A stretch of DNA of 64,000 bases. It comes from Octopus bimaculoides (lineage: Eukaryota). Numbering within the stretch: position 1 is the stretch's first letter; every line of letters starts with the position of its first letter. Shown here piece after piece: positions 2,381-57,753 of the stretch. The stretch is taken from positions 4,267,682 through 4,331,681 of the forward strand of contig NC_068982.1 in assembly GCF_001194135.2 (NCBI RefSeq), in the 5' to 3' direction. The position numbers were made by a program, and so were the translations under genes. The notes under the pieces were generated by a model that did no database searches, was not told where the DNA came from, and was given only the letters and a program-made list of their open reading frames with translations.

Positions 2381-2618
2381 TATTAATTGGAAGGGTTAAT
2401 CACTAAAAACGTCAACTACAAACTTCATTGACAAAATGCCACGGAAAGTATTTTCTTGAAGAACGTACGTATTTTGAAATATGAAAACTGAAAGTAGTTC
2501 TTTGAGGATTCTGTGGAGAGAATGAATTCCTTTATACAACGTTGATGTCAGTTTCTTCTAGAAAGACTATAGAGCAGCGGTTTGCCGTCACCCGTCACCG
2601 GCAGTGAAACGGTAAATT

Positions 2619-2832
2619 CTTTTCTACTCTAGGAACAAGGCCTGAAATCCTTGGGGAGGGGGCCAGTCGATTAGATCGACCCCAGCACGCAACTGGTACG
2701 TAATATATCGACCCCGAAAGGATGAAAGACAAAGTCGACCTCGGCAGAATTTAAACTCAGAACTTTGAGAAAGACAAAATACCGCTAAGCATTTCGCCCG
2801 GCGTGCTAACGTTTCTGCCAGCTCGCCGCCTT
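2619..2832 (-). mobile_element. tRNA-derived SINE family A (Meta-domain-like), full length
   Basis: Minus strand has a head ggcggcgagctggcagaaacgttagc, a B-box-like gagtttaaattc and the core ctttcatcctttcggggtcgata; 15-bp TSD gtgaaacggtaaatt at 2604-2618 and 2833-2847. Confidence 0.92.
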
Positions 2833-3080
2833 GTGAAACGGTAAATTGAGCGAGAAACATATAATTTAATAACTGAAATGAGATACTAACCAACTTCTTA
2901 GTGAATTGTTCGATAATCTATCGAGCCGACCAGCTGAGTTCCTTAATACAGACTAGAGCAAATAATTACAATGGAGAAAATGCTGTCTCGAAGTTATATG
3001 TACACACTACAGATTTACAATATATTTTGTAACATAAATATAATGCCAAATATGCTAAACAAAGAAATGTTTAGGTCAAA

Positions 3081-3488
3081 TATAGAAAAATTATTATTTC
3101 TAAATCTCTGAACGAGAAATATACAGTAGCAGTACTCTAGAGTAAAGATATTTGCTAACATAATGTGGCAGTCTTGATTAGGATGAATGTTACTGTTATT
3201 TAGCCCCAGGAAGCATAGTCTCCAGTTGGCTATCGACACACTATCTGCGTCCTTATCTATCCAGACCTTATCGCCATCTCTAGCCGAGCAGTTATTCTGT
3301 ACTGATGAAGGTAAATAATCCAGAAACCATTGGTGTATAGATATTGCTCTGAGCTGAGTGGAGACACTAGACTCCCATGATCGAAAATATAAGTACTCAA
3401 ATAGTGTGTCGATAGCCAGCTGGAGACGATGTTTCCTGGGATAACATTCATCCTAACCAGGACTGCCACATTATATTGGCAAATAATC
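3081..3488 (+). mobile_element. Fold-back copy of the ~340-nt HHR-bearing repeat (retrozyme-like / non-autonomous Penelope-like)
   Basis: Inverted arms 3081-3245 vs 3401-3488; TSD tttaggtcaaa at 3070-3080 and 3489-3499; homologous to 14730-15235 and 49511-49930. Confidence 0.8.
3296..3341 (+). ncRNA. Type I hammerhead ribozyme-like motif (cleavage triplet GUG, probably inactive)
   Basis: TCTGTA CTGATGA AGGTAAATAATCCA GAA ACCATTGGT G TATAGA: 6-bp stem I, core boxes, near-palindromic stem III. Confidence 0.7.
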
Positions 3489-4042
3489 TTTAGGTCAAAC
3501 AAGTTTAGGTAAAAGAGACTGTATATAGAATCAGTATGTAATGTCTAATCGAATGTCTGCTTGAGTGACATTACGTTCAATATGGCTTAAATCTCGAGTC
3601 ATAACTCTTTCAACGAATTTTATATAAATAATAACGGTACGACTAACGATAATTGTGGAAAATACCACTTAGCTTTTAAGTCATTTAGTTCAAGATATTT
3701 AAGATAATTAGACACATCATGAAATATATTTAGGACAAACACGCAAGTTACGAACCAAAAAGAGACAGGTAGAAAGTAAAGACTTAGAATCGCAAGATCA
3801 CAATTTGGAATCCTTTGGAATAATTTTATCTTGTCAATATATATCAATTTTATTGGTTTATACAATTTTTAGTACTTACCATAAATTTGTCATAAGTATT
3901 GTATTTCAAATTAGAGAGTTTCTTTAAGTTACGAGAATCACTGTCGCTGAATACACTTTGATTACCATTGTCATTTACATGTAAATCATTCATTTTCTGA
4001 AACGATTCAAAGCGTTCAACACCTAAATGTGTTTATACATTC

Positions 4043-4245
4043 TTTTCTACACTAGGCACAAGGCCCGAAATTTTTGGGGAGGGGGCCAGTCGATTAGATC
4101 AACCCTAGTAGGCAACTGGTACTTAATTTATCGACTCTGAAAGGATGAAAGGCAAAGTCGACCTCGACAGAATTTGAACTCAGAACATAAAGACAGACAA
4201 AATACCGCTAAGCAAAATTTCGGGCCTTGTACCTAGAGTAGAAAA
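4043..4245 (-). mobile_element. SINE family A, 5'-truncated, with inverted duplication of its tail
   Basis: 4043-4213 matches family A; 4214-4245 is the reverse complement of 4043-4074. Confidence 0.88.
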
Positions 4246-7033: not shown

Positions 7034-7320
7034 TTGTGAGTGGATTTGGTAGACGGAAACTGTAAGAAGCCCGTTGTGTAGGTATTATATATGTGTGTGT
7101 GTATGTATGTGTGTGCCTTTTTGTCTGAGTTTGTTCCTCACCATCGCTTAATAACCGTTTTTTTTTATTTACGTCCCCGTAACTTAGTGGCTCGGTAAAA
7201 GGCACCGATGAAATAAGTACCATGGTAAAAAAAAAAAAACCGCTTTGGTTGATTCGTTCAACTAAAATCCTTCATCATGGCTGCAATCTAAATAAATGAA
7301 ACACGTAAAAGATAAAAGAT
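7034..7320 (+). mobile_element. SINE family B, 3' part
   Basis: tgtgagtggatttggtagacggaaactg, internal TG repeat, tttacgtccccgtaacttag, and taaaaga tail. Confidence 0.8.
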
Positions 7321-7820
7321 AGGAAAGATGTCATTAAACGAAGAAGATATGAACGCACACGCCTGGACACATAAACGCTACCACACACACTCACGGAGAC
7401 ACGCATGCACACACACACACATCTACATTCCATTGATTGTACAATCTTGTATTGATAGATAAGTCTCGAGCTTGTATTTTCCTTTTATGTGAAATTCAGT
7501 TGAATACAAACCTAATCAGTGATCAGTTGGTGCAGGGTGACTTGTCAATCTCAGATAACAATAGTTGAAAGAAAAACAATGGTTAAGATATATTAATCAT
7601 TTAAAGTTTATCTGTAGTAAATAAATAATCCACAGAATGAAGACTTTGTGACAAAGAAAATATTCATGGAAACAAATAATCTGATGACGTTTATCCTGTA
7701 TAATTCATAGACATGTATCAAAATTTTCCGTTAGTTTAATCTTATATAGAAATATAAAGGATAGCAAACAATGAACATGTAACTCAAAGTTATCAGTCAA
7801 TAGGCGCAGTCGTTGCTACA

Positions 7821-13060: not shown

Positions 13061-13219
13061 CTTTTCTTTCTATTATCGTTTACTTGTTTCAGTCAAAAGA
13101 CTGTGGCCATGCTGGGGCACCACCTTGAAGAATTTTAGTCGAACGAATTGACCCCAGTATTTCATTTTTTACAAGCCTGGTAAATCGGTGTCTTTTGTCG
13201 AACCGCTAAGTTACAGGGA

Positions 13220-13292
<73 letters not shown>

Positions 13293-13448
13293 GATGAGCT
13301 TCTTTCAGTTTCTACCAAATTCACTCACAAGGCTATGATCATCCCGAAACTATTGTAGAAGACACCCGCCCAAGTTGTCACGAAGTGGGACAGAACCCAG
13401 AACCATGTGGTTGGGAAGCAAACTTCTTACCACATAGTCACGCCTGTG
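13061..13448 (-). mobile_element. SINE family B, near full length, with internal (CA)n
   Basis: Head at 13448 (cacgcctg), tail tttacttgtttcagtc, internal microsatellite 13223-13289. Confidence 0.9.
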
Positions 13449-14690
13449 TCTATTTCATTTCTGTGAAAATTTCTTGAGCGTTTTCAAAATCCATGGATCT
13501 TCACAAACCATACTTATTGTGTATTCACGCTAAATTAACAACAAAATATAGACCAACCGCAGAACATGAAGTAATGTACTTCTTGCAATCAATTTGCTAC
13601 ATGGTCTCAATTTTCGTTTGAAAATAATCCACTTGAAATATACAGCTAATGTGCTTGAGAAAAGTATGCGCATCACCTTGTCTCATTCGCCTATCTCAAT
13701 AAATAAATAATTAAATAAATCAAGTAATGCTTATACCAAAAATTAGTATCCTCTTGTTTCAGATTCTTTTTTGTGTCGTTGTAGAATGTTTCGTTACAGT
13801 TTGATAGGTAGGGGAGGATATTTCTTCAGCGCATGCTCCGCGACCCAATGATCTACTACTGTGTGAGATATTTAGATACGTTAGGAGAAAAAAAAGTATT
13901 AAAAAACATGAAATGTATTTTTCATTAAAATATTGCAAAATATAGCCGTAAACTTGTCAACTAAATTTAATTTAGAGCGACAAGTGACGGAGATTTATAC
14001 CTATTAATTCATTTACAGTAAATATTACCAATAAGAATGAATATATTTATTTCGCGGAAACGTAATAATGATGACTGCAAATCTGAAAGTGAACTAGGTC
14101 TAACGTTAAAAAGTGATAGTACAGCCTAATTGTCAATATTTCGACTGTTATTTAAATTTTAGTTTCTTTCGGGCCGCAGACGAGAATCAAACATCCTTAT
14201 TGTCGGTTGTGAGAAGAGACAAATTTTGGAAGAAACAGTGGTATGTAGTTATTAAAAGCGATATCTATTTTACATTTAAACATCCATATTTTTCAAGGAA
14301 AGTTATTTTAAAAGTTTGACAGAACAGCAATTAAAGCACAGGCAATATCCTTTTTAAATACTTTGACAGTTTCTGAAAAATGTTCAAATCACTTCACTTC
14401 AAATAACTGAAATGGTTGTACAGAAATGAAAGCAGACTCTTTACTTAAGTCAATTATTTTGAATGTCGAAAGATGATTAAAAAGATGTTAGAAAACGGAA
14501 CAGAATAAGAAATAAACAAAATTATCCTCTCAAATACAGTTTATTGAGGAATTATGGTGCTACCTGCAAATGCCGGAAAAAATGTACAGAATAAACTAGA
14601 ATTCACTTCACAGGCTAATGACTCTGCTGACTCGTAACAAAGCACAATTCCTTTCAGTGTTTGCTTCTCAGATAAATGCCGAACAATTAT

Positions 14691-14735
14691 TCTGTGCTGA
14701 TGAAAGGAAATAACCCAGGAATCGCGATACACAGA
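14691..14735 (+). ncRNA. Type I HHR-like motif (A13G core change)
   Basis: TCTGTG CTGATGA AAGGAAATAACCCA GGA ATCGCGAT A CACAGA; perfect 6-bp stem I and palindromic stem III. Confidence 0.75.
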
Positions 14736-15027
14736 TATTGTTTTGTGCTGAGTGGAGATGCTAAATACCCTTGTTCGAAAATATAAGGACATAGATAGTG
14801 TGTCGTATAGCCAGCTAGAAATGATGTTTCCTGGGGTTAAATAACTGTAATATTCGTCCTAATCCAGGACTGCCAAGTTATGTTGGCAAATAAACCTTAC
14901 GCTAGAGTACTGTTACTGAATGTCTCTCGTTGAGAGATTTACAAATAGAAATTTTCTATTTTATTAGATCAGTGACTGTGCGTCACTTTGAAAACTATAT
15001 ATTTCGAAAAAGAATTTTGCAACGCCA

Positions 15028-15072
15028 TCTCTGCTGATGAAGGGAAATAACCCAGAAATCGTGATACACAGA
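15028..15072 (+). ncRNA. Type I HHR-like motif (core intact)
   Basis: TCTCTG CTGATGA AGGGAAATAACCCA GAA ATCGTGAT A CACAGA. Confidence 0.78.
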
Positions 15073-15767
15073 TATTATTTTGTGCCTAGTGGGGATGCTA
15101 AACTTCCTTGCTCGAAAATATAAGGAAACAGATACTGTGTCGTATAGCCAGGTGGAGACGATGTTTCCTGGGGCTAAATAACAGTATCATTCGTCCTAGA
15201 CCAGGACTGCCACGTTATGTTGGCAAATAATCTTTACCCATAATTTTTTTCTTTACTGCAAAAGAATGACATGTACCCCAAGAGGTCAATATATCTCTGA
15301 TATTTTATCGACCAATTTTGAAAATGTAGACCAGCATGGAAGGTAATTTGTAATGATGGATTGGAGGTCTGTCCTGTTAAGTTCCGTTAACAGCTCGGTA
15401 GAAAATTCTTAATGTTATCCAAATGCATTGAATCTCTTCATAGGGAGATACTCATTTCAAAATCATTCGCAGTCGAATTAAAATAGCAAAAAGTTGACGA
15501 ACAAATTGCTGAAATAGATAATTTCATAACCAGCAGATTATTGAAGACTCATTTGAACAAATTTGCATCGATATGGATTCAATACACACAGGCATAGTTT
15601 TTATACGGAACTTAGATGGTTGTTTAGATGTTAAAAAACTATGAAGGACACATGAACATTTGCTCGTGAAAAAGAAAATAAAAGCACGGACGCTTGTGTG
15701 AGTAACTTTGAAATTAATTTCGGATTTCTTGCTTGGAATATTTGGTGTGTAGAAGGAAGCGAGCTGG

Positions 15768-15945
15768 TAGGATAGTTACCGCGCCGGGAAAATTCACGTT
15801 CTGTGCTCAAATGTCACTGGGGCCGACTTTGCTTTTCACCCTTTCCTGATTGATAAAATAAATACTAGTTGAATACTGGAGTCTATGCAATCGACTTACC
15901 TTGTACCCTGAAATTTCTGGCCCTGTGCCGAAATTAGAAGCCAAT
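15768..15945 (+). mobile_element. SINE family A, old diverged copy
   Basis: gcgagctggtaggatagttaccgcgccggg...gactttgcttttcaccctttc...gataaaataaatactag. Confidence 0.75.
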
Positions 15946-15998
15946 ATTTAGTGAGTGGACATTATTATACTCACAAAGATAAAAAATAGTTCTAATAT

Positions 15999-16212
15999 TC
16001 TTTTCTACTCTAGGCACAAGGCCCGAAATTTTGGGGGAGGGGCCAGTCGATTAGATCAACCCTAGTAGGCAACTGGTACTTAATTTATCGACCCCGAAAG
16101 GATGAAAGGCAAAGTCGACCTCAGCGGAATTTAAACTCAGAACGTAAAGATAGACGAAATACAGCTAAGCATTTTGCCCGGCGTGCTAACGACTCTGCCA
16201 GCTCTCCGCCTT
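15999..16212 (-). mobile_element. SINE family A, young full-length copy
   Basis: Close match to 2619-2832; TSD tagttctaatat at 15987-15998 and 16218-16229. Confidence 0.93.
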
Positions 16213-18072: not shown

Positions 18073-18515
18073 AAGCAAGAAAGCTAGTTCTAAAATCTCT
18101 CTAAGAGATCAACGCAGTAGTTGTACTATCAAGTAATGTTCATAACCACTTCGACATGACTGTTCCGTCGAACGGACTTTACTGCGACTTTTTAACCCCA
18201 AGAGGACATCTCCTCTAGTTGGCTAACAATGCATACCTGCATCCGATATGTTACGAGTAGGGGAACGAACCCCTACCATCTTCTAGCGACGGAACAAGCA
18301 TACCAGCCTGGTTTCGAGCTATTTCTTCCTCTCTTCAGCACTGGACACCACGTTTGCTAGACATAGCAGTAGCTCGCAATGTATATAAATTCAAGTGAAC
18401 ATACAGTCACTGATTTTGCAACAAGCAAAAAAGTTACTTCTAAAATCTTTCTGAGACGTCAACGCAGAAGTTGTACTCGCAACTAATATACGTAGCCACT
18501 TCAACATGGCTGAAT
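18073..18515 (-). mobile_element. Diverged 1.25-mer of the HHR-bearing repeat (period ~350 nt)
   Basis: Direct repeats at 18088 and 18438; minus strand has atcagtgactgtatgttcacttgaa, matching 14968-14992; gacatctcctctagttggctaac matches 49441 onward. Confidence 0.75.
18297..18342 (-). ncRNA. Type I HHR-like motif (core intact, GUA site)
   Basis: AGTG CTGAAGA GAG-loop-CTC GAA ACCAGGCTGGT A TGCT; stem I weak (two G·U pairs). Confidence 0.7.
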
Positions 18516-18706
18516 TGTGCCACATTAATAATGTATAACTACTTTAAAAGTGGCACCGTCGAGTTTACTGTTACAGAAGTCAACCACCTGATTAACACGT
18601 TACAAATACAATCTGAAAATGGAGCAGTAGAACTATGCAAAACATTTCTCAGGTTTTTAATTTTTGATATTGTCTTCGTTATCTACGTTCCAATGATGGA
18701 ACTTTG

Positions 18707-18852: not shown

Positions 18853-20575
18853 CTTTGATAGGTTTCGGCCAGTACTGGCTCAGGCCATGTCTAATTTAAT
18901 AGCACCACCTGGTGAAGTCATTAAATCAGGAATCGGACAACATGGACCACTCGAGGAGAGAGTTATTGTTTATGGCGACATATCCGGGTGTAGGAGGTTT
19001 ATCCGGGATTTTTTGAAGGAATTTGTCCAAAGACTTCTTGAACTTTATGGGGTCTGTTTCTGCTTTAATGTGTTTTGGTGTAATGTTAAAGAGAGCGGGG
19101 CCAACTGAGGTGAAATAATTGTGCCGTATTGTTATATGATGCGAGTATGATTCATGTTGTGGGCGGTTAGCACGGGGTTCAAATCTTGGTTGTATCTTAA
19201 AGGCGATGCCAACATCATTGGGGCAATACTGATGGAATATTTTCCACATCATGCAAATGATGTAACGCTCACGGCAGTGTTGGAGAGAATAAAGCTTGAG
19301 CTTTTCTAGTCGACCCCAATAGTCAAAACCTGTCATGCCATCTATCTTTCTTGTAATTGACCTTTGAAGTGCTTCAGTTTTCATGATACTTTGTTTCGTG
19401 TGGGGAAACCACAGTGGACAATAGTGTTCGAGGTGGGGTCGGGCAAAAGTGGAGAAGTGAAGGATAATGGTGTGGATATCTTTCGACTGGAAAGTTCTGA
19501 GAATCCAGGAGCATATTCTGCGGGCCATGTCAGCTTTGCTGTTTATATGAGCAGCCCAGCTTATGCTGTTGTCCACAATTACTCCCAAGTCTCTGATGTT
19601 GTTGGATGCCATGGGGGTTTCACATGTTGGGGTCTACCTATCAGGAAACACTTGATCCATTGCAGTAACTTTCTAGAGACACCAATGTTGGATAGTTTTT
19701 TGAAGAGGATCTTATGATCCACCCTGTCAAAGCCTTGCTGAAATCAAGGTAGATTACATCACTATTCGAGCCCTCTCCCACAGCTCTCGAAATGTCATCA
19801 AGGTGATGCAGGAGCTGCGTTAGGCAGTTTTTTCCATTACGGAACTCATGTTGGTTGGGGTTCAGCAGTCTGTTGCTTTCAAGAAAGTGTGTTATCCGTG
19901 ATCTCACCACCCTCTCAAATACCTTGAGGATATGAGAGGTGAGCGAGATCGGCTGGTAGTTTCCCTTTTTGAAAATTGGGACAGAAAGTTCTCAGGAATA
20001 TAGCCATTATCCAGTGAGTTCCTTCACAGATTAGCAAGAGGAGATGCAAGTTGGTGTCGACACACCTTCAGGACACAAGCAGGGAACCTATCAGGGCCTA
20101 CTGCTGAATTGTGTTCAATTTGGTTTATTGGCGCTAAGACATCAGGGGCGGCAAGCGTTATGTCCGATATAGTGTGTTGAGGATTAAAATCACTGACAGT
20201 CCAAATCGGCAATATCAGGGTTGCTAAAAACAAAGCAGTACTGTTTCTGCAGTATCTCAGTCATAGCTCTTGCATTATCTTGGAGGATGCCATTTTCATC
20301 AATTAGAGGGCCAACAGTAGGGTGTGTTTTTTCGCAAAAGAGAACACTTTGGGGTTGGTAAGTATCAAATAGGATATTCCGGTTGTGTACTCAGAGAAAA
20401 CCAACCCTGTGAGTATTTAACCCCTAGTCTGGTCCAAAGCACTCACGGGCCTCGATAGACTTCAGCCCCGTCTCTGGTGTATTCTTAGGATATTCTTTAG
20501 TTTGGAAAATTATGTTTCATCTGATGATTTCGGTTTTTTGTAATGGAGTAATGTTCTCATTCTTCTATTAAAAAG
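18853..20575 (-). mobile_element. CR1-group LINE, 5'-truncated, with internal deletion of the RT core
   Basis: KGNYQPISLTSHILKVFERVV...NQHEFRNGKNCLTQLL...DVIYLDFSKA; then NNIRDLGVIVD...RPHLEHYCPLWFP...YWGRLEKLKLYSLQ...LDKFLQKIPDKP (ORF 18926-19612). Confidence 0.9.
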
Positions 20576-27050: not shown

Positions 27051-28328
27051 TCAGGCTGAGTAAGAAGTAAGCAGCGTTTTGAATCATGCAATTCATCACA
27101 ATACATATTAACAATTTTATTCCTCAAAATAAGCACCATTACAATCAACAAGTTTTTGCCAACGAGTTACAAGTTTGTTTAATTCCAGTAACATAAAAAT
27201 CTGGAGTTCCGGAGCTGATGGACTCTTTGAATGCACTTTCAGCATCGGTTTGATTTTTGAACTCTTTCTCTCGCAGGAAACCATCAAGGTGCTTGAAAAA
27301 GTGGTAGCCGATAGGAGAAAGGTCTGGGGAATATGCTGAGTGGGGAAGAACTTCGTAGCCAAGTTCCCTCAACTTCTGGAGCATCATTAGTGAAACGTGT
27401 GTTCGAGCATTGTCATGAAGAATGATTGACTCTTTTCTGTTGTCGTGTCTGGGACAGAAAAGTAGCATTTTTTCGTTCATTTTGGCAATTTCATGGAAAT
27501 ATGCTTCTGCAGTAATGGCTTTTCCGGATTTTAAGAAGTTATAGTGGATGAGTCCAGCAGTACACCACAAAACAGTCACGATAACCTTCTTTTTGAAGAG
27601 CTCGGGTTTAGGGAAGGTTTTCGGTGCTTCATTTTGGTTCTACCACTGCGTAGAACGTTTTTTATTATTGTACAAAATTCACTTTTCATCGCAAGTTACA
27701 ATACAGTCGAGAAATGAATCGGTCTAGTTACGGAGAAGATGCGAAGAGCAAATTTCATATCCGCGAATTTTCTGATTTTCATTCAAATCGTATGCTATCT
27801 ATTTGTCGAGCTGTTTTGATTTTCCGATCGCATGTAAATAGTTGTAGGCAGTTTTCTGACTAACTTGAAATTTTTTTTGCCAGTTCTCGATTGGTTATAC
27901 GTGGATCTTTCTCAATGACGGTCTTTAATTGAGCATCATCGATGACAGATGAGCGTCCACTTCACTTACGATCTTCAAGGCTCAGGTCTCCACTGCGAAG
28001 TTGTTTAAACCATTTTCGAGCTGACCACTCACTGGTCATTTCCTCACCAAACGTTTCGGTGATATCACAAGCAGTTTCAGCTGCTTTACGTCCTTTTTTG
28101 AAGATGAATAGTAAAATTGCTCGAATATTGCGCTTTGACCGTTCCAATTTTGATGATTGTAACAACGGTGAAAAAAACATCAATGTTAATTTATTGAAGC
28201 ATTTGGGCAAGTCTTTGTTTTGTATTATCAAACAATTGCCAAAAAATGTTTAAAAATTCAAAACTCTGCAAAAATCAGGTACAATTTCCTCATGGTTCAA
28301 AACGTTGCCCACTTTTTAGTGAGCCTGA
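27051..28328 (-). mobile_element. Full-length decayed mariner (D,D34D) transposon
   Basis: ~40-bp TIRs with TA on both sides; HTH region IRAILLFIFKKGRKAAET, HDNARTH, HSAYSPDLSP, WQKLVDCNGAYFEE; 1278 bp; frameshifts. Confidence 0.93.
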
Positions 28329-29229: not shown

Positions 29230-30300
29230 TGCTCCACTAGCCGTAACCTAGTAATACACAACGTGAGAAGACTTCCGAAGAACCGATGAAAACAGTAGAC
29301 AAGACAAGGAAAATGAACCCATCAACGGGAATATTGATAATATTAAACCAGCTGACAAGACAGGAATAGTTAATAACAGACGGAATTCGGACACTAATAC
29401 CAACACAACACAAACTGCAGTGGGTGATGGTAATAAACTAAGGGGAAGCAGAGACATGTAGCAGGAACTATAACACAATAAATAATAGGGACAGTGAACT
29501 AGGTCTCTGTAAATGTTCTAGGGATAAAGTATGCCCCTTAAACTCTAGCTGTTTGACGAAGAACCTAGTATATAGATGCAAAATCACTTCCGAAGGAAGG
29601 ACGTACTTCTATATAGCGGCCAGTTCGCTAAATTTCAGAAAAAGACTTGCTAATCATTTAAATTCATTTAGAGATAGAAGTAAGATGATCAACACGAACC
29701 TAGGCAAAGTAATCTGGTCCCTTAAAAATAGGAACCATAGCTATATCACAGAGTGGGAGGTGATTAGTACAGCTAAACCGTATCGTGCGGGAGAAAATAG
29801 ATATGAGCTTTGTATAGAAGGAATATAGCAAATCTTCACATCAAGACACAAATTACTTAATAGTAGACTGAAACAGGCTTTAAGATGCTTGCATAAACAT
29901 ACCAAAATATTTCAGAAATTTAACGAACGTTCTAGACAACTCAATATCCCACCCACAGATGGATGGGATAAGAAGGAAAGAAGCCCATATCCCAAAACTT
30001 CACAAATACATGGCTTTGTCATAACTAACCTAGTATATATTCAGTCTGTTTTCTACTACCCAGCAGAAATAATATAGTACGAAAATATATGAATAACTAA
30101 AAACATTACAAGTTCTGCCCAGCTACTACAATACACAATGAAGCCTGCCAAAACAGTAACATTAAGCTCGACCTAATTAGATAGAATCCTGACTTCGGCC
30201 AGCAACTGGTGTGAAACCAAGGTCAACCACACAAGTTTACAATTTCACATTCAAAACAACCTCCCATCACTTCTCTCTGAACCTTAACTAACAAACAACT
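29230..30300 (+). mobile_element. Penelope-like element 3' remnant (GIY-YIG endonuclease)
   Basis: CKCSRDKVCPLNSSCLTKNLVYRC...FYIAASSLNFRKRLANHLNSF...NLGKVIWSLK...WEVISTAKPY...ELCIE, then LLNSRL; element boundaries approximate. Confidence 0.8.
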
Positions 30301-30555: not shown

Positions 30556-30561
<6 letters not shown>

Positions 30562-30760
30562 GAAATTTATAGAAAAACAAAAGACGAAGACAGATGTATA
30601 AACAACAAGCAGGTGTATTAGTTTGAGGCACAGGGAAGTGAGAAAGTCTTTTACATTTCAAGGCTCCGCTCTTCAACAGAAAGGAATAAGAGAAAATAAG
30701 CAGAGAGAGAATAAAAAGCCTGTGGATTTAGCGATCAAGTATGGCGACTGGTTGGGGGAA
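30556..30760 (-). mobile_element. Short repeat carrying a decayed HHR-like motif (CUGUUGA variant, 30648-30683)
   Basis: Minus strand CTTT CTGTTGA AGAGCGGAGCCTT GAA ATGT A AAAG; 3' part matches 50155-50232 on plus. Confidence 0.55.
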
Positions 30761-35004: not shown

Positions 35005-35238
35005 GTTATTTCTTTATTGCCCACAAGGGGCTAAACATAGAGAGGACAAACAAGGACAGACACAGTGCTTAAGTCGATTACATCGACCTCAGAGCGTAAC
35101 TGGTACTTAATTTATCGACCCCGAAATAATAAAAGGCAAAGTCGACCTCAGCGGATTTTGAACTCAGAACGTAACGGCAGACGAAATACTGCTAAGCATT
35201 TCGCCCGGCGTGCTAACGATTCTGCCAGCTCACCGCCT
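35005..35238 (-). mobile_element. SINE family A variant (same head, different tail) nested in the Chapaev left end
   Basis: Head and core match family A; tail ttgcccacaaggggctaaacatag differs. Confidence 0.88.
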
Positions 35239-36052
35239 TTAAATGGGCAACAACTTTTTTTCTGCTGACCTAAGTTTGAGACCTGTTTTAGAGTAATTTG
35301 AGGTCACTGAGTTTTAAAATGGCAATAGTCTTTTTTTCTGTTACGTCTATTCTTTTTTCTATGGGCTGGTCCATATTGTCCCCACCCGTAGCTCCATGTT
35401 TGAAATGTTTGAATTCCCTTTACACTTTTTGTTATATATGTCGGTGTTTTACAGCACCAAGTAAAAGGATGAATGTTAATGACATTTTGAAAAGATCCTA
35501 CTGGGCTTATTTATAAATTAAAGCTGGTGATCAAGATAAATCATGGGCCCGCACAATGTATGTAAACCCTATGTCGAGAATCTATGCCAATAGACAAAGG
35601 GCACAAGGAAACAACTAACATTTGACATTCCTATGATATGGTGGGAGCCAAAGAACCATGTAAACGATTGCTACTCTTGTCTCACAATGACTTCTGGTTA
35701 TAGAAAATAAGTTACCTTAATCTGGATTCAGCAATTTATCCAGTCCTTCACTCCGATGGAATACCAGAATCCGTTTTCAAGGACCTACCTTCACTGCAGG
35801 ATGAACGTGATGATATATGTAAACCATGAACATGACAGTGATATAGACTTTGTAGAAACATCAACCAAAGAACGTGAAAACTTCAACCAGGCGGAACTTG
35901 ATGGTTTAGTCTGAGACCTAGGTCTGCTAAGAGAGTTATCAGAACTGTTAGCTTCTAGGCTTAAAGAGGAGAATTCGTTGCAGAAAGAAACAAACATGAC
36001 TTTTTATCAGAAAAAGGAAAAAGATCTCTTGGCATTCTTTACAACTGGAAAA

Positions 36053-36845
36053 GATTTTGTTAACTGTTGTGAAGTAGCGGGACAGTTAAACGTGATGGAT
36101 GTTGAACAGTATGATTTTGTTAACTGTTGTGAAGTAGCGGGACTGTTAAACGTGATGGATGTTGAACAGTATGATTTTGTTAACTGTTGTGACGTAGCGG
36201 GACTGTTAAACGTGATGGATGCNNNNNNNNNNNNNNNNNNNNNNNNNNNNNNNNNNNNNNNNNNNNNNNNNNNNNNNNNNNNNNNNNNNNNNNNNNNNNN
36301 NNNNNNNNNNNNNNNNNNNNNNNNNNNNNNNNNNNNNNNNNNNNNNNNNNNNNNNNNNNNNNNNNNNNNNNNNNNNNNNNNNNNNNNNNNNNNNNNNNNN
36401 NNNNNNNNNNNNNNNNNNNNNNNNNNNNNNNNNNNNNNNNNNNNNNNNNNNNNNNNNNNNNNNNNNNNNNNNNNNNNNNNNNNNNNNNNNNNNNNNNNNN
36501 NNNNNNNNNNNNNNNNNNNNNNNNNNNNNNNNNNNNNNNNNNNNNNNNNNNNNNNNNNNNNNNNNNNNNNNNNNNNNNNNNNNNNNNNNNNNNNNNNNNN
36601 NNNNNNNNNNNNNNNNNNNNNNNNNNNNNNNNNNNNNNNNNNNNNNNNNNNNNNNNNNNCAGTATGATTTTGTTAACTGTTGTGAAGTAGCGGGACTGTT
36701 AAACGTGATGGATGTTGAGCAGTATGATTTTGTTAACTGTTGTGACGTAGCGGGACTGTTAAACGTGATGGATGTTGAACAGTATGATTTTGTTAACTGT
36801 TGTGACGTAGCGGGACTGTTAAACGTGATGGATGCTGAACAGTAT
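36053..36845 (+). repeat. 60-bp in-frame tandem minisatellite inside the transposase remnant
   Basis: Units start at 36053, 36113, 36173, (gap), 36666, 36726, 36786; each encodes DFVNCC(E/D)VAGLLNVMD(V/A)EQY. Confidence 0.95.
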
Positions 36846-38504
36846 GATCCTAGTGAATGGAGACTCTTTATAGAGAGTTCAAAGAAGAGTCTAAAATGTG
36901 CATTACCCTATAATGGAAACTTGCTCGGTGCGCTTCTTATTGGTCACTCTGTGCACTTAAAAGAGAATTATGTTTACACAAAAGTTGTATTAGATTTACT
37001 TAAGTATGATGAACAAAAATTGGTCATATGTGTGGATCTAAAAATGGTCAAGCTTTTACATGGCCAACACGAAGTGTATACAAAATATCCGTGTTTCCTG
37101 TGTTTATGGGATAGCCAAGCAAGAGACAAACATTGGGAAAAGAAACTCTGGCCAGTTAGGAAAAGTTTGACTGTTGGAAAGAAGAACATCATACACCAAA
37201 CACTTATTGAGCGGGAGAAAATTATCTTTCCATCCCTTCATATTAAACTAAGACTAATGAAATAATTTGTCAAAGCTCTTAATGTGGAGAGTAACTGTTT
37301 CAAATTCATATGTACATTTCCTGGCCTAAGTTATGATAAAATAACCATTGGTGTTTTTCATGGGCCACAAATCAGAAAGTTAACGAAATGCCAGAGTTTC
37401 TCGAGCTTGATGGCTGACATAGAAAAAAGAACATAGAATTCATTTGTGACTGTTGTGAAGGGACTTTTGGGAGAGTGAAAAGGCTGCAAACTACAAGGAT
37501 TTGGTGGAGACATTACTTGATAGTTTTCATCTTTTAGGTTGCAACATGAGCATAAAGTTTCGTTTTCTCAATAGCCATCTCGATGAATTTCCTGCTAATC
37601 TCAGAGACGTGAGTGATGAGCATGGTGATCGTTTTCATCAAACGATCAAGATTATAGAGGAGAGACATCAAGGCCAGTGGAACACACACATGACGGCAGA
37701 CGACTGCTGGAGAATTCAAAGAGCCTATGCAGACATGAAATACTCCACATGCTTTCGAAAGCGGAAATTTGTTCCATGAATATGAAGGTATATTTATGAT
37801 GGTTTGTGCTTTATCTATCATATTAGAAAATTAACAGAATGTTAAAGGTGATGCTATCTTACATTTCATATTCTATTGACATTTATATTCTATTGACATT
37901 TATACAGTACATCATAAAATAGGGGTATGCTATAGAATGAAAACCTGAGGTGTTAAGAAAAAAATGGATGCCATATTTGAAATCAGCATCTCAAATTTAA
38001 CTAAAAGCAAAAAGTGTCGACCAGTGGGTTTAGTTAAAAGTAAATCTGAAGAAAAATTCCATTACCTTATCAATAAATGTATCGTTAGTTTAAATTTACT
38101 GCAAGCTTTTCTTCGTTTCCGGACAGGATGTAAAACATTCTAGATTCAAGAATATATACCAAATTTTCTTGGAATATCTTAAGAAAGTAATATGCTGAAA
38201 AATCTTCTAGAATCTTTATTCAGAGACTAACCAGGAATGGTCTTCTTCATATCCGTAATATCTTCAATATGCATCTCCCATTCCAACTGCTTCACCTGAA
38301 AGTAAAAATAAAATGAATTAAGAATTGAAAATTTGATTGTTATGTATGTTTTCCTAAATAATTCTTCGGACTGGACATCAACTGGTTTACGGTTCCTTGC
38401 TTACAATGATCACATCTCCGCACTGTATGATCCATTGAAAATTATTATTCCTAAGAACCTGTAACATTCCACAGCGGATATCGGAGAAATAACGAGGTAA
38501 GTAG

Positions 38505-48859: not shown

Positions 48860-49367
48860 NNNNNNNNNNNNNNNNNNNNNNNNNNNNNNNNNNNNNNNNN
48901 NNNNNNNNNNNNNNNNNNNNNNNNNNNNNNNNNNNNNNNNNNNNNNNNNNNNNNNNNNNNNNNNNNNNNNNNNNNNNNNNNNNNNNNNNNNNNNNNNNNN
49001 NNNNNNNNNNNNNNNNNNNNNNNNNNNNNNNNNNNNNNNNNNNNNNNNNNNNNNNNNNNNNNNNNNNNNNNNNNNNNNNNNNNNNNNNNNNNNNNNNNNN
49101 NNNNNNNNNNNNNNNNNNNNNNNNNNNNNNNNNNNNNNNNNNNNNNNNNNNNNNNNNNNNNNNNNNNNNNNNNNNNNNNNNNNNNNNNNNNNNNNNNNNN
49201 NNNNNNNNNNNNNNNNNNNNNNNNNNNNNNNNNNNNNNNNNNNNNNNNNNNNNNNNNNNNNNNNNNNNNNNNNNNNNNNNNNNNNNNNNNNNNNNNNNNN
49301 NNNNNNNNNNNNNNNNNNNNNNNNNNNNNNNNNNNNNNNNNNNNTATATATATATATATATATATAT

Positions 49368-49930
49368 CGTAATATATATTTGCCAACTAAATGTGGCGGT
49401 CTCATAGAGGACGATGTTACTGTTGTTTTTAGCCCCTGGAAGACATCTCCTCCAGCTGTCTAACGACACGCTGTCTAACGACACGCTGTCTGTGTCCGAT
49501 TAGTATTTGGGACCACCACATTTAGTTGGCAAATATATTTTACGATTCCGTAATGTTACTGTTTACCTCTCGCTCAGAGATTTAATATAGCTTATTTCTC
49601 CTTTTTCGAGATCAGCGACAATTTGTCGCTGGAAAAAGCATATAATATCTTGCGAATCGAATGAGTTTTCATCACACACTGAAGACGGGTAACTAACCAG
49701 AAACTCGGGTTTGTGTTTATCACGTAAGGGTAGAAATGAGAGCGATGACCTCCTCCTCGCAAATACTAATCGGACATAGATAGTGTGTCGTTAGCCAGCT
49801 GGGAGATGTCTTCCTGGGGCTAAAAATGACAGTAACATCGTCTTCTATGGGACTGCCACATTTACTTGGCAAACATATTTTACGATTCCATACTGTTACT
49901 ATTTATCTCTCGCTCAGATTTAATATAGCT
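49368..49930 (+). mobile_element. HHR-bearing repeat: inverted 5' arm plus permuted 1.25-mer (period 340 nt)
   Basis: 49511-49592 repeats at 49851-49930; 49368-49508 is the reverse complement of ~49762-49883; flanked by (TA)n. Confidence 0.85.
49674..49716 (+). ncRNA. Type I HHR-like motif (core intact, GUU site)
   Basis: ACACA CTGAAGA CGGGTAACTAACCA GAA ACTCGGGT T TGTGT. Confidence 0.78.
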
Positions 49931-50027: not shown

Positions 50028-50087
50028 TATAAAAATTAAAAGATAAAGAGAGCAATGGTAAGGTTGGAAAGGTATTTTATGGATAGA

Positions 50088-50136
50088 GTCTTACAGCTGT
50101 TTCTGGGAAGATCCAGTATTTCCCTTCATCGGAGAC
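50088..50136 (-). ncRNA. Type I HHR-like motif, family 2 (U4C change)
   Basis: GTCT CCGATGA A GGGAA-loop-TTCCC A GAA ACAGCTGT A AGAC. Confidence 0.7.
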
Positions 50137-50225
50137 AGAAAAATACCCTCCTCAACGTTAAACTAATACATCTGTTTGTTGTTTACACACCCGTCTTCGT
50201 CTTTTGTTTTTGTTTTTGTAAATTC

Positions 50226-50260
<35 letters not shown>

Positions 50261-56734: not shown

Positions 56735-57161
56735 TTTTTACTCTTTTTACTCTTTTACTTGTTTCAGTCATTTGACTGTGGCCATGCTGGAGCACCGCCT
56801 TTAGTCGAGCAAATCGACCCCAGAACTTATTCCTTGTAAGCCTAGTACTTATTCAATCGGTCTCTCTTGCCGAACCGCTAAGTAACGGGGACGTAAACAC
56901 ACCACCATTAGTTGTCATGTGATGTTGGGGTAACAAACAGACGCCCTCACCCCACACATATATATATATCTATATCTATATATATATATATATATACAAC
57001 AGGCTTCTTTCAGTTTCTGTCTACCAAATCCACTCACAAGGCTTTGGTCGGCCCGAGGCTATAACAGAAGACAATTTGCCCAAGGTGCCACGCAGTGGGA
57101 CTGAACTCGGAACCATGTGGTTCTTAAGAAAGCTACTTAACACACACCCACTCCTACGCCT
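56735..57161 (-). mobile_element. SINE family B, full length
   Basis: Head, ccttgggcaa block, internal (TA)n, Meta-like block and (gtaaaaga)n tail are all present. Confidence 0.92.
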
Positions 57162-57753
57162 ATTGTCAATAAATTCAACAAACAACCTGTAAACGTTTAT
57201 TAATCACAACCTAAAACCTTTTATTTTATGATAAAATGCATAATAAGTAACTACATATATGATACATCCGGTAGTTTTTATTTGCAATTTCATTCTTTGT
57301 AAAAACTAAAGATTATTATGTCATTAATCAAATTTTAAAATCTCGAGTTATGTCGTTGTTGAAGAGTTCAGAAAGAGGACGAAATAGTACTATCCACGGC
57401 TACCAGAGATTTTAAGGACTTTAGCGCATGAAAACATAAAATAATTATATGGAAATATATGTATAGCCTCTTCACTCTTTGATAATGATTTTATGTAAGA
57501 AAATTAAACTTAGAAGTGATTCTCTCCCCTTAAATAGCAATCTTCAGCGTTTCCAGCACTTGTATTTTGTCATTCTCGTCCGTCGTTTATGCCTACCAAA
57601 CAACCGGTACAAATATATGGTGTGCAACGCTAAGTATAACCAAACTTCTGGTAGGCTGTGTTTGACGCTCGATTTCGCAATCGTTTTCTTGTTAAAGTAC
57701 GAGTTCATCCCTGACTAATGATCAACGGTATTCTAGTTATGAACATCTGGTCT

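What the first reader, a model, noticed from the sequence alone, without database searches (positions are those of the whole stretch)
14691..15238. Tandem dimer of a 337-nt non-coding unit bracketed by two hammerhead ribozymes: candidate cephalopod retrozyme / circRNA precursor
Seen: two diverged head-to-tail units, each preceded by a type I HHR motif (14691-14735, 15028-15072). Predicted cleavage after 14729 and 15066 would release a 337-nt monomer; no ORF is present. Established: metazoan non-LTR retrozymes are tandem small HHR-bearing repeats processed to circular RNAs, and Penelope-like elements carry minimal type I HHRs with palindromic stem III that act as dimers. Inference: this is such an element, mobilised in trans. 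I know of no description in octopus but have not searched. The first HHR has A13G, so this locus may be a dead copy.
Basis: partly seen in the sequence, partly recalled or inferred. Interest (0 to 1): 0.9.

Follow-up and report, generated by a model that had tools for sequence, protein, structure and literature searches.

The report
Decayed hammerhead-ribozyme retroelement copy in octopus
This is an old, broken 1.6-unit copy of a short (about 340-base) non-coding jumping element that carries a self-cutting hammerhead RNA motif, a kind already known in many animals and seen here in an octopus-like genome.

Summary
Window 14691-14900 and 15028-15237 are direct repeats (87% identical, 337 nt apart), and each starts with a type I hammerhead (HHR) motif. 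The predicted cleavage sites are 14729|14730 and 15066|15067. The array is 1.62 units, not a full dimer.

It belongs to a dispersed family. Three more loci in the window (B about 3081-3488, C about 49365-49925, D 18073-18515 minus strand) carry homologous units of 337-350 nt with an HHR. Across the five HHRs the three helices covary: 8 of 13 pairs change on both sides, 84.6% of cells are paired, and 0 of 500 shuffles reach that.

Loci B and C have a head-to-head inverted 5'-truncated copy next to a direct copy. B is flanked by an 11-bp target duplication and C by (TA)n. This is the insertion signature of Penelope-like elements.

The best reading is a fossil non-autonomous HHR retroelement (a non-LTR retrozyme, or Penelope-dependent element).

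Both HHRs at this locus are damaged. Copies A, B and C have A.A or C.A where canonical HHRs have the G10.1-C11.1 pair. Rfam finds no hammerhead above threshold.

Cleavage, circular RNA and the mobilising element could not be tested. I rate it a new member of a known kind, of modest interest.

The parts
14678..14690 (+). 5' strand of the distal part of helix I of HHR A1 (GCCGAACAAUUAU). This is the leftmost sequence of the insertion that has clear family homology (shared with locus B at 3282-3295).
   Evidence: Local alignment of A against B. The MFE fold pairs GAACAAU with AUUGUUU at 14737-14743, across an internal loop.
14691..14735 (+). HHR A1 (type I). Helix I UCUGUG/CACAGA is intact and helix III is the perfect palindrome AUCGCGAU. 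The core is damaged (A13G) and stem II is weakened (G-to-A). Predicted cleavage is after 14729.
   Evidence: Sequence; alignment and pair counts; family covariance model 57.6 bits; no Rfam hit.
14730..15066 (+). The 337-nt monomer between the two predicted cleavage sites. It is non-coding, 36% G+C, and has several conserved hairpins (for example CAGUGAC..GUCACU at 14972-14989 and CUCUC..GAGAG at 14925-14937).
   Evidence: Circular MFE -82.2 kcal/mol against -64.1 +/- 4.8 for shuffles, z = -3.8. The consensus fold of monomers A, C and D has 64 pairs, 19 of them with compensatory changes. ORFs are at most 40 aa.
14691..15027 (+). Repeat unit 1 (complete, 337 nt).
15028..15237 (+). Repeat unit 2 (partial, 210 nt). 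It ends at ...TTGGCAAATAATCTTTA, the same 3' end as the direct copy at locus B.
   Evidence: K2P distance between the two arms is 0.148.
15028..15072 (+). HHR A2. The core CUGAUGA...GAAA...UA is intact. Helix I has a C.C mismatch, there is no distal helix I, and the helix III palindrome is spoiled (UCGUGA). Predicted cleavage is after 15066.
   Evidence: 60.2 bits. The MFE fold of 15005-15085 does not form the HHR. The upstream block CGCCATCTCTG matches B 3271-3282, which suggests a 19-nt deletion, although MAFFT prefers a substitution-rich alignment.
3081..3256 (-). Locus B, an inverted 5'-truncated family copy (unit positions about 93-295). Its 3' end faces outward and abuts the left target duplication.
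   Evidence: BLAST 82% over 181 nt; sequence.
3257..3488 (+). Locus B, the direct family copy with an HHR at 3296-3341. Helix I UCUGUA/UAUAGA is compensated relative to A. Position 17 is G, so this HHR is probably inactive. The copy is flanked by the 11-bp direct repeat TTTAGGTCAAA at 3070-3080 and 3489-3499.
   Evidence: 56.7 bits.
49365..49477 (-). Locus C, an inverted 5'-truncated copy next to the left (TA)n.
49508..49925 (+). Locus C, a direct copy of about 1.25 units (period 340) with an HHR at 49673-49717. The core is intact (CUGAAGA, GAAA, UU|), helix I ACACA/UGUGU is fully compensated, and helix III CUCGGG is self-complementary. The copy ends in (TA)n.
   Evidence: passes the strict descriptor; 50.1 bits.
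18073..18515 (-). Locus D, a more distant family member of about 1.25 units (period 350) with a near-canonical type I HHR at 18295-18344. It has a G10.1-C11.1 pair, helix III ACCAGGCUGGU, and UA| at the cleavage site.
   Evidence: 42.7 bits. It gives the only Rfam Hammerhead_1 signal, which is sub-threshold (12.9 bits, E = 1.7).

Best explanation
Window 14678-15237 (+ strand) is a fossil insertion, 1.6 units long, of a short (about 340-356 nt) non-coding retroelement that carries one type I hammerhead ribozyme per unit. It is a cephalopod member of the metazoan non-LTR retrozymes, which are now argued to be non-autonomous derivatives of Penelope-like elements (PLEs).

How an intact source copy would work:
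1. A transcript spanning two or more units folds an HHR in each unit. Helix III is a short palindrome (AUCGCGAU), so two HHRs in one RNA can pair into an 8-bp shared helix III.
2. Each HHR cuts after position 17 (GAUA|CACAGA). [quoted passage not shown]
3. A host RtcB-type ligase closes this RNA into a circle.
4. A PLE reverse transcriptase/GIY-YIG endonuclease nicks AT-rich or (TA)n DNA on both strands and primes internally on the circular or oligomeric RNA.
5. This produces copies longer than one unit, and head-to-head inverted copies, flanked by a target duplication.

Shown here: the motif and its covariation, the dispersed family, the 337-350-nt periodicity at three independent loci, the insertion architecture, the lack of coding capacity, and a structured monomer.

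Inferred from the literature and not tested here: cleavage, ligation, circular RNA, and PLE dependence.

At this particular locus both ribozymes carry disabling changes, so it should not self-process. The two arms differ by K2P 0.148. If they were identical at insertion, the copy is roughly 20 million years old on the octopus repeat calibration in PMC13282606.
For: - Repeat geometry and motif positions.
- Family copies inside the window: B, C and D. A family-specific 3-block pattern hits 4 times against 0 in shuffles. A second pattern hits 5 times against 0.
- HHR fold over five copies: 84.6% of cells paired against 71.3% in shuffles (0 of 500 reach it) and 20-50% when partners are slid. Eight of 13 pairs change on both sides. 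All six helix I pairs covary. Pair 15.2-16.2 switches between U-A and C-G.
- Helix III is palindromic or self-complementary in all six motifs.
- Distal helix I with an internal loop is predicted for A1, B and D, with a compensatory change between A and B.
- Strict descriptor: 2 hits (C and D) against 0.085 expected.
- A covariance model built from the five motifs finds them plus a sixth at 50089-50135.
- PLE-style architecture. B is TSD(11 bp) | inverted truncated copy | direct copy | TSD. C is (TA)n | inverted | direct 1.25 units | (TA)n. This matches PMC8557442 (Fig. 2 legend and text) and the both-strand cleavage and extension with internal initiation reported in PMC11167929.
- Monomers are stably folded, z = -3.8, -2.4 and -2.5, with 19 compensated pairs in the consensus fold.
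- Size, G+C and lack of ORFs match the description of non-LTR retrozymes in PMC7229834.
- PLEs are abundant in octopus genomes (PMC13282606, PMC8967140).
Against: - Rfam finds no hammerhead at gathering score anywhere in the window. It finds none at E<=10 for A or C. Only D gives 12.9 bits against a 34-bit threshold.
- Copies A1, A2 and B have A.A, and C has C.A, where canonical HHRs, including PLE min-HHRs (PMC4209133), keep G10.1-C11.1. Activity of this variant is unknown.
- Three of the five family HHRs (A1, A2, B) are defective.
- Arrays are short (at most 1.6 units). Only locus A holds two HHRs, whereas described retrozymes range from dimers to long multimers.
- No target duplication was found at locus A.
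- No PLE ORF is in the window, and no octopus PLE sequence was available for comparison.
- Only 6-7 partial copies from one 64-kb window were analysed. No further copy was found in 20.5 kb of Octopus sinensis DNA or in metagenome or viral contig scans.
- There is no RNA evidence at all.
Confidence: 0.78

Rival explanations
1. The repeats are terminal pieces (pseudo-LTR, pLTR) of an autonomous Penelope-like element. On this view they are 5'-truncated or internally deleted PLE copies, not a separate short non-autonomous family.
For: PLE HHRs lie in pLTRs and PLE insertions are partial tandems with inverted truncated copies (PMC4209133, PMC8557442). The same architecture is seen at B and C. Xenopus retrozymes are homologous to PLE pLTRs (bioRxiv 10.64898/2026.07.22.740005), so the two categories blur.
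Against: Three independent loci (A, C, D) repeat with periods of 337, 340 and 350 nt and have no ORF between repeats. This means the repeating unit itself is only about 340 nt. No RT or GIY-YIG remnant adjoins any copy. The RT remnant near D is a LINE-type RVT_1 fragment 400 nt away.
Confidence: 0.12
2. It is an ordinary SINE or dispersed repeat in which a hammerhead-like string is fortuitous or long non-functional. The 1.6-unit structure would come from DNA-level duplication or LINE-mediated template switching.
For: There is no Rfam hit. Positions 10.1/11.1 are non-canonical. Most copies are defective. A-box and B-box-like strings (GCTGAGTGG, GTTCGAA) follow the cleavage site. Locus D lies just 3' of a LINE RT remnant on the same strand. 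Octopus genomes hold hundreds of unclassified SINE families (PMC13282606).
Against: Compensatory changes in all three helices across subfamilies, while core nucleotides stay fixed, are not expected for a chance string. Helix III is palindromic in all six motifs. ARAGORN finds no tRNA-like head. Each unit has several T4 runs that would stop Pol III. No poly(A) or common LINE-like 3' tail is present. The inverted twin copies with outward 3' ends plus a target duplication fit PLE integration.
Confidence: 0.08
3. It is a local tandem duplication (replication slippage or unequal crossing-over) of unique sequence, with no mobile element involved.
For: Only 1.6 units are present and no target duplication was found at this locus.
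Against: Homologous units occur at three other places in the window, on both strands, with different flanks.
Confidence: 0.02

Closest known systems
Metazoan non-LTR retrozymes (Cervera & de la Pena 2020, PMC7229834), for example Mytilus about 350 nt, axolotl 331/353 nt, Acropora 220-240 nt
   Same: Non-coding, AT-rich head-to-tail units of about 340 nt, each with one type I HHR. Helix III is a short palindrome suited to dimeric cleavage. The monomer is strongly self-paired. They coexist with PLEs in the genome.
   Different: Here the arrays are only 1.25-1.6 units. Positions 10.1/11.1 are A.A or C.A in the A, B and C copies. The copies seen are decayed. Expression as circular RNA was not examined.
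Penelope-like elements and their minimal HHRs in pLTRs (Cervera & de la Pena 2014, PMC4209133; Craig et al. 2021, PMC8557442; Frangieh et al. 2024, PMC11167929)
   Same: Type I HHR with a palindromic helix III. Partial tandems. An inverted 5'-truncated copy beside a direct copy. (TA)n or AT-rich targets. Discrete internal 3' junctions.
   Different: There is no RT/GIY-YIG ORF. The whole unit is about 340 nt. Helix I is 6 bp plus an internal loop plus a distal stem, and helix II is short, which is the 'canonical' metazoan layout. Min-HHRs instead have a long helix II and a short helix I. The G10.1-C11.1 pair that min-HHRs keep is missing in A, B and C.
Newt/salamander satellite 2 and Schistosoma Sm-alpha HHR repeats (reviewed in PMC6155905)
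   Same: Repeats of about 330 nt with a type I HHR that acts best as a dimer. Loop 2 is A-rich (AAAUAA here; the Rfam Hammerhead_1 consensus has CAAAUA).
   Different: Those are long satellite-like arrays or Pol III SINE-like units with proven cleavage. Here the copies are dispersed, short and untested, and Pol III transcription is unlikely because of the T4 runs.
Plant LTR retrozymes (PMC4918200)
   Same: Non-autonomous, HHR-bounded, with a circular RNA intermediate proposed.
   Different: Plant elements have type III HHRs inside real LTRs, PBS and PPT, 4-bp target duplications, G+C above 55%, and are mobilised by Gypsy elements. None of this applies here.

Membership tests
Hammerhead ribozyme, type I | Conserved core C3-U-G-A-N-G-A9 ... 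G12-A-A14 ... A15.1/U16.1-H17 in the right order around three helices, with helix I open | tested here: met
   Read directly and aligned. The core is complete in A2, C and D. A1 has GGAA (A13G), B has G at position 17, and the sixth motif (50089-50135) has CCGAUGA.
Hammerhead ribozyme, type I | Helices I, II and III supported by compensatory change | tested here: met
   8 of 13 pairs change on both sides, 84.6% of cells are paired (0 of 500 shuffles reach it; slid controls give 20-50%), and helix I covaries at 6 of 6 pairs. Only five sequences were available.
Hammerhead ribozyme, type I | G10.1-C11.1 base pair closing helix II next to the core | tested here: not met
   pair 14-29: G-C only in D. 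It is A.A in A1, A2 and B, and C.A in C. The locus under review therefore departs from the canonical core periphery.
Hammerhead ribozyme, type I | Score at or above the Rfam gathering threshold (RF00163, 34 bits) | tested here: not met
   No hit at gathering. No hammerhead hit at E<=10 for A or C. D scores 12.9 bits, E = 1.7.
Hammerhead ribozyme, type I | Site-specific self-cleavage in Mg2+ | not testable with these tools
   This needs in vitro transcription of monomeric and dimeric constructs.
Metazoan non-LTR retrozyme | Head-to-tail repeats of about 150-450 bp, two or more units, each with a type I HHR | tested here: inconclusive
   Periods are 337, 340 and 350 nt at loci A, C and D. Arrays are only 1.25-1.6 units, and only locus A contains two HHRs.
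Metazoan non-LTR retrozyme | Non-coding and low G+C (below 45-50%) | tested here: met
   G+C is 0.36-0.43. ORFs are at most 40 aa inside the element. A translated-unit search of 5.8 billion proteins found nothing.
Metazoan non-LTR retrozyme | Monomer RNA highly self-paired | tested here: met
   Circular MFE z-scores are -3.8, -2.4 and -2.5, with about 62% of bases paired. The consensus fold has 19 compensated pairs. The antisense strand also folds well (z -1.7 to -3.2), so this is supportive only.
Metazoan non-LTR retrozyme | Accumulates as unit-length linear and circular RNA joined at the HHR site | not testable with these tools
Penelope-like element (autonomous) | Single ORF with a telomerase-like RT and a GIY-YIG endonuclease | tested here: not met
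   There is no such ORF in or beside any copy. Pfam scans of window ORFs found only LINE RVT_1 fragments and a mariner transposase remnant.
PLE-dependent non-autonomous element | PLE insertion signature: partial tandem, adjacent inverted 5'-truncated copy, AT-rich or microsatellite target, target duplication | tested here: met
   Locus B has an 11-bp TTTAGGTCAAA duplication around an inverted plus direct pair. Locus C has (TA)n on both sides of an inverted plus 1.25-unit direct pair. Locus A itself has a partial tandem only, with no inverted copy and no target duplication.
PLE-dependent non-autonomous element | Sequence homology of the unit to the pLTR of a resident autonomous PLE | not testable with these tools
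   No octopus PLE sequence or repeat library was reachable. The only octopus DNA fetched (L001, 20.5 kb) has no family copy.
tRNA-derived SINE | tRNA-like Pol III head and a LINE-type or poly(A) tail | tested here: not met
   ARAGORN finds nothing in the window. The unit has several T4 runs and no poly(A). The A-box and B-box resemblance is partial only (alignment).

The most novel reading that the evidence does not exclude
The family is a live or recently live octopus retrozyme whose HHR works with a non-canonical A.A (or C.A) in place of G10.1-C11.1. It would yield abundant circular RNAs of about 340-356 nt. Its insertions (twin inverted copies with outward 3' ends, an 11-bp target duplication, (TA)n targets, and two discrete 3' junction sites) would give the first direct structural evidence that retrozyme circles are integrated by the both-strand, internally initiating mechanism of Penelope-like elements.
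Probability: 0.25. Interest if true: 0.55.

Novelty: new member of a known kind. Interest (0 to 1): 0.35.

Why it matters
HHR-bearing short tandem retroelements are known from cnidarians to amphibians, including a mussel. I found no description of them in cephalopods in the searchable literature, although PLEs are a major octopus repeat class.

If the family is expressed, it would add a class of abundant ribozyme-made circular RNAs to octopus transcriptomes, where transposon activity is already debated. It would also provide a natural HHR variant at position 10.1/11.1 to test.

The insertion architecture seen at loci B and C bears on the open question of which machinery mobilises animal retrozymes.

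The locus under review is itself an inert fossil.

Tried and rejected
1. Rfam at gathering and at E<=10 found no hammerhead at A or C, and only a sub-threshold hit at D.
2. Tandem Repeats Finder missed the 337-nt repeat because there are fewer than two copies.
4. I tried to fish for more family copies through spurious ORFs. A 531-aa concatenate of stop-free frames from A-D, searched against 5.8 billion proteins, gave no hit.
5. I tried to fetch octopus DNA through TE proteins:
   - The exact ORF 18926-19612 is not on record.
   - The LINE RT fragment found Octopus sinensis LOC115227543. Its 20.5-kb locus L001 has no family copy.
   - A 1288-aa concatenate of window TE fragments returned only non-octopus LINEs.
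6. Two HHR-independent family patterns were scanned in JGI metagenome contigs, and one in IMG/VR. The results were 0 hits, 3 chance hits and 0 hits.
7. Extension of the array upstream of 14678 or downstream of 15238 is not significant against shuffles.
8. No target duplication of 7 bp or more was found at locus A.
9. The tRNA-SINE idea was rejected because ARAGORN found nothing.
10. A GIY-YIG-like look of ORF 29442-29825 was not confirmed by Pfam.
11. The interpretation that A2 carries a 19-nt deletion rests on a 10/12 match to B. MAFFT prefers a different alignment, so I keep it as an inference.
Full report
**1. What is at the coordinates**

Reading 14400-15600 and aligning the two halves confirms a direct repeat. 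It runs 14691-14900 against 15028-15237, is 210 nt long and 87% identical, and has a spacing of 337 nt (BLAST). Unit 2 ends at 15237, so the array is 1.62 units rather than a full dimer.

Neither the 130 nt upstream of 14690 nor the 140 nt downstream of 15238 aligns to the unit better than shuffled sequence does. Tandem Repeats Finder does not report the repeat because it has fewer than two copies.

Each unit starts with a hammerhead-like motif at the stated positions:
- A1, 14691-14735: UCUGUG-CUGAUGA-AAGG/AAAUAA/CCCA-GGAA-UCGCGA-UA|CACAGA.
- A2, 15028-15072: UCUCUG-CUGAUGA-AGGG/AAAUAA/CCCA-GAAA-UCGUGA-UA|CACAGA.

ORFs inside the element are at most 40 aa.

**2. Is it a hammerhead, or chance?**

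Rfam does not help. There is no hit at gathering score in the whole window. There is no hammerhead hit at E<=10 in 1.2-kb or 71-nt slices around the motifs.

The evidence comes from relatives inside the window. BLAST of the unit and a window self-comparison find three more loci:
- Locus B: 3081-3256 on the minus strand and 3257-3488 on the plus strand.
- Locus C: 49365-49477 on the minus strand and 49508-49925 on the plus strand, with a period of 340.
- Locus D: a more distant relative at 18073-18515 on the minus strand, with a period of 350.

A strict HHR descriptor of my own was run over both strands. It requires CUGANGA, a stem II, GAAA, U-H, and at least 4 bp of helix I. It returns exactly two hits, the motifs of C and D, against 0.085 expected per shuffled window.

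I aligned the five motifs and counted pairs for the HHR fold:
- 84.6% of cells are paired, against 71.3% in shuffles (0 of 500 reach it) and 20-50% when partners are slid.
- 8 of 13 pairs change on both sides.
- All six helix I pairs covary: UCUGUG/CACAGA in A, UCUGUA/UAUAGA in B, ACACA/UGUGU in C.
- Pair 15.2-16.2 switches between U-A and C-G, while the core letters stay fixed.

Helix III is palindromic or self-complementary in every copy: AUCGCGAU, ACUCGGGU, ACCAGGCUGGU, ACCAUUGGU, and ACAGCUGU in a sixth motif. This is the hallmark of type I HHRs that act as dimers (PMC4209133, PMC6155905).

In A1, B and D, helix I continues beyond an internal loop into a distal stem. In A this is GAACAAU/AUUGUUU and in B it is GAGCAGU/AUUGCUC, with a compensated change. 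The layout is therefore that of 'canonical' metazoan type I HHRs rather than the minimal Penelope variant.

I conclude that the motif is a real hammerhead-family fold that was under selection while these subfamilies diverged.

**3. What departs from a canonical HHR**

In D the pair next to the core is G10.1-C11.1. In A1, A2 and B it is A.A, and in C it is C.A (pair 14-29). PMC4209133 lists the conserved G10.1-C11.1 pair among the features of PLE HHRs, so this is a true departure. Its effect on activity is unknown.

At the locus under review both motifs are further damaged:
- A1 has A13G and a G-to-A change in stem II.
- A2 has a C.C mismatch in helix I and a C-to-U change in the helix III palindrome. 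It also has no distal helix I, and its MFE fold does not form the HHR.

A2's upstream block CGCCATCTCTG matches B 3271-3282. In B that block is followed by 19 more nucleotides (GCCGAGCAGTTATTCTGTA) before CUGAUGA. I read this as a 19-nt deletion in A2, but MAFFT offers a substitution-rich alternative.

B has G at position 17. So of five family HHRs, only C (the non-canonical 10.1/11.1 type) and D (canonical) look intact.

**4. What kind of element**

The unit is non-coding and 36-43% G+C. It folds as a circle well below shuffled controls, with z = -3.8, -2.4 and -2.5 for monomers A, C and D and about 62% of bases paired. A consensus fold of the three monomers keeps 64 pairs, 19 of them with compensatory changes. 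Examples are CAGUGAC/GUCACU in A against CAGCGAC/GUCGCUG in C.

Three independent loci repeat with periods of 337-350 nt and have nothing between the repeats. The repeating unit is therefore the element itself, not the end of a long coding element.

The insertion architecture is informative:
- B consists of an inverted 5'-truncated copy and a direct copy, head to head, with both 3' ends facing outward. It is bracketed by a perfect 11-bp direct repeat, TTTAGGTCAAA, at 3070-3080 and 3489-3499.
- C has the same inverted-plus-direct layout between two (TA)n tracts.
- The 3' junctions fall into two clusters. One is at unit position about 210-222 (A2, B direct, C inverted). The other is at about 285-300 (B inverted, C direct, D).

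Partial tandems, an adjacent inverted 5'-truncated copy and microsatellite targets are the described signature of Penelope-like elements (PMC8557442). A purified PLE protein cleaves and extends both DNA strands and initiates reverse transcription internally on the RNA (PMC11167929).

No RT/GIY-YIG ORF is in the window. Pfam finds only LINE RVT_1 fragments and a mariner transposase remnant. This is as expected for a non-autonomous element.

All of this matches the definition and the proposed life cycle of metazoan non-LTR retrozymes (PMC7229834). It also matches the recent argument that those are non-autonomous derivatives of PLE pLTRs (bioRxiv 10.64898/2026.07.22.740005).

**5. Mechanism: shown and inferred**

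Shown:
- the motif;
- covariation;
- the family;
- the periodicity;
- the architecture;
- the lack of coding capacity;
- the structured monomer.

Inferred from the cited work:
- An oligomeric transcript is cut after position 17 by HHRs acting as a dimer through the palindromic helix III.
- The unit-length RNA is circularised by an RtcB-type ligase.
- A PLE RT/EN copies the circle or oligomer into AT-rich target sites.

For this locus, the accumulated damage predicts no self-processing. The arms differ by 28 of 210 positions (17 transitions, 11 transversions, K2P 0.148). If they were identical at insertion, that is about 0.07 per arm. On the calibration used for O. vulgaris repeats (JC 0.09 at about 25 My; PMC13282606), this gives roughly 20 million years. 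The estimate fails if the template was already heterogeneous.

**6. Rivals**

- A pLTR fragment of an autonomous PLE is hard to separate conceptually. The about 340-nt periodicity at three loci argues against it.
- A chance motif in an ordinary SINE is contradicted by the covariation, the palindromic helix III, the absence of a tRNA-like head, the T4 runs in the unit, and the insertion architecture.
- A purely local duplication is excluded by the dispersed copies.

**7. Source organism and the limits of this analysis**

The best named relative of a LINE RT remnant in the window is an Octopus sinensis protein. A 20.5-kb O. sinensis contig shares an 83%-identical repeat with the window but has no copy of this family.

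All attempts to obtain more copies failed. The family picture therefore rests on six or seven partial copies from one window.

**8. Novelty**

The held literature describes abundant PLEs in octopus (PMC13282606, PMC8967140), and Naiad-type PLE remnants without HHRs in cephalopods (PMC8557442). I found no paper describing HHRs or retrozymes in cephalopods.

This is a new member of a known kind. The locus itself is a dead copy, and the family deserves a genome-wide and RNA-level look.

Noticed in passing
window 50089-50135 (-), element about 50031-50229: A sixth HHR-like motif: CCGAUGA (U4-to-C), stem II GGGAA/UUCCC, GAAA, perfectly palindromic helix III CAGCUG, and UA|. It lies in a roughly 200-bp element flanked by (TA)n on both sides. 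The family covariance model scores it 23 bits, E about 7e-4. The 5' part of that element recurs at 30560-30624 (+), next to another (TA)n.
   Followed up: partly
window 18073-18515 (-) and 18929-19991 (-): Locus D carries the near-canonical HHR. It lies about 400 nt downstream, on the same strand, of a LINE reverse-transcriptase remnant (RVT_1, E = 8e-7; best named relative an Octopus sinensis protein). D also has an extra duplication of about 35 nt at its 5' edge (18520-18575), reminiscent of the PLE 'tail'.
   Followed up: partly
window 14737-14790 and homologous positions in B: Just 3' of the cleavage site there are strings that resemble Pol III A and B boxes (GCTGAGTGG and GTTCGAA). ARAGORN finds no tRNA, and the unit contains several T4 runs, so this is probably not meaningful.
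   Followed up: partly
window 2616-2832, 4039-4214, 15997-16212, 35072-35239; inverted pair 15793-15896 / 16045-16148: An unrelated repeat of about 215 bp is present in at least five copies (85-93% identical). One pair forms an inverted repeat less than 1 kb downstream of the finding. It is likely one of the abundant octopus SINE-like families.
   Followed up: no
window 36053-36848: A tandem array with a 60-bp period (95-99% identical copies), interrupted by a 437-N assembly gap. It produces the longest 'ORF' in the window, which has no Pfam match.
   Followed up: no
window 27148-27639 (-): A mariner-type transposase remnant (Pfam Transposase_1, E = 2e-15).
   Followed up: no
window 29442-29825 (+): A 128-aa stop-free frame whose cysteine pattern and 'LVY...YIAAS' strings reminded me of GIY-YIG nucleases of Naiad-type PLEs. 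Pfam gives no supporting hit, so the resemblance is unverified.
   Followed up: partly
window 56748-57163 and L001 15515-15913: A 418-bp repeat is shared at 83% identity with an Octopus sinensis contig (VCDQ01000580.1). More diverged copies lie at 13076-13454 and 7034-7329 in the window.
   Followed up: no
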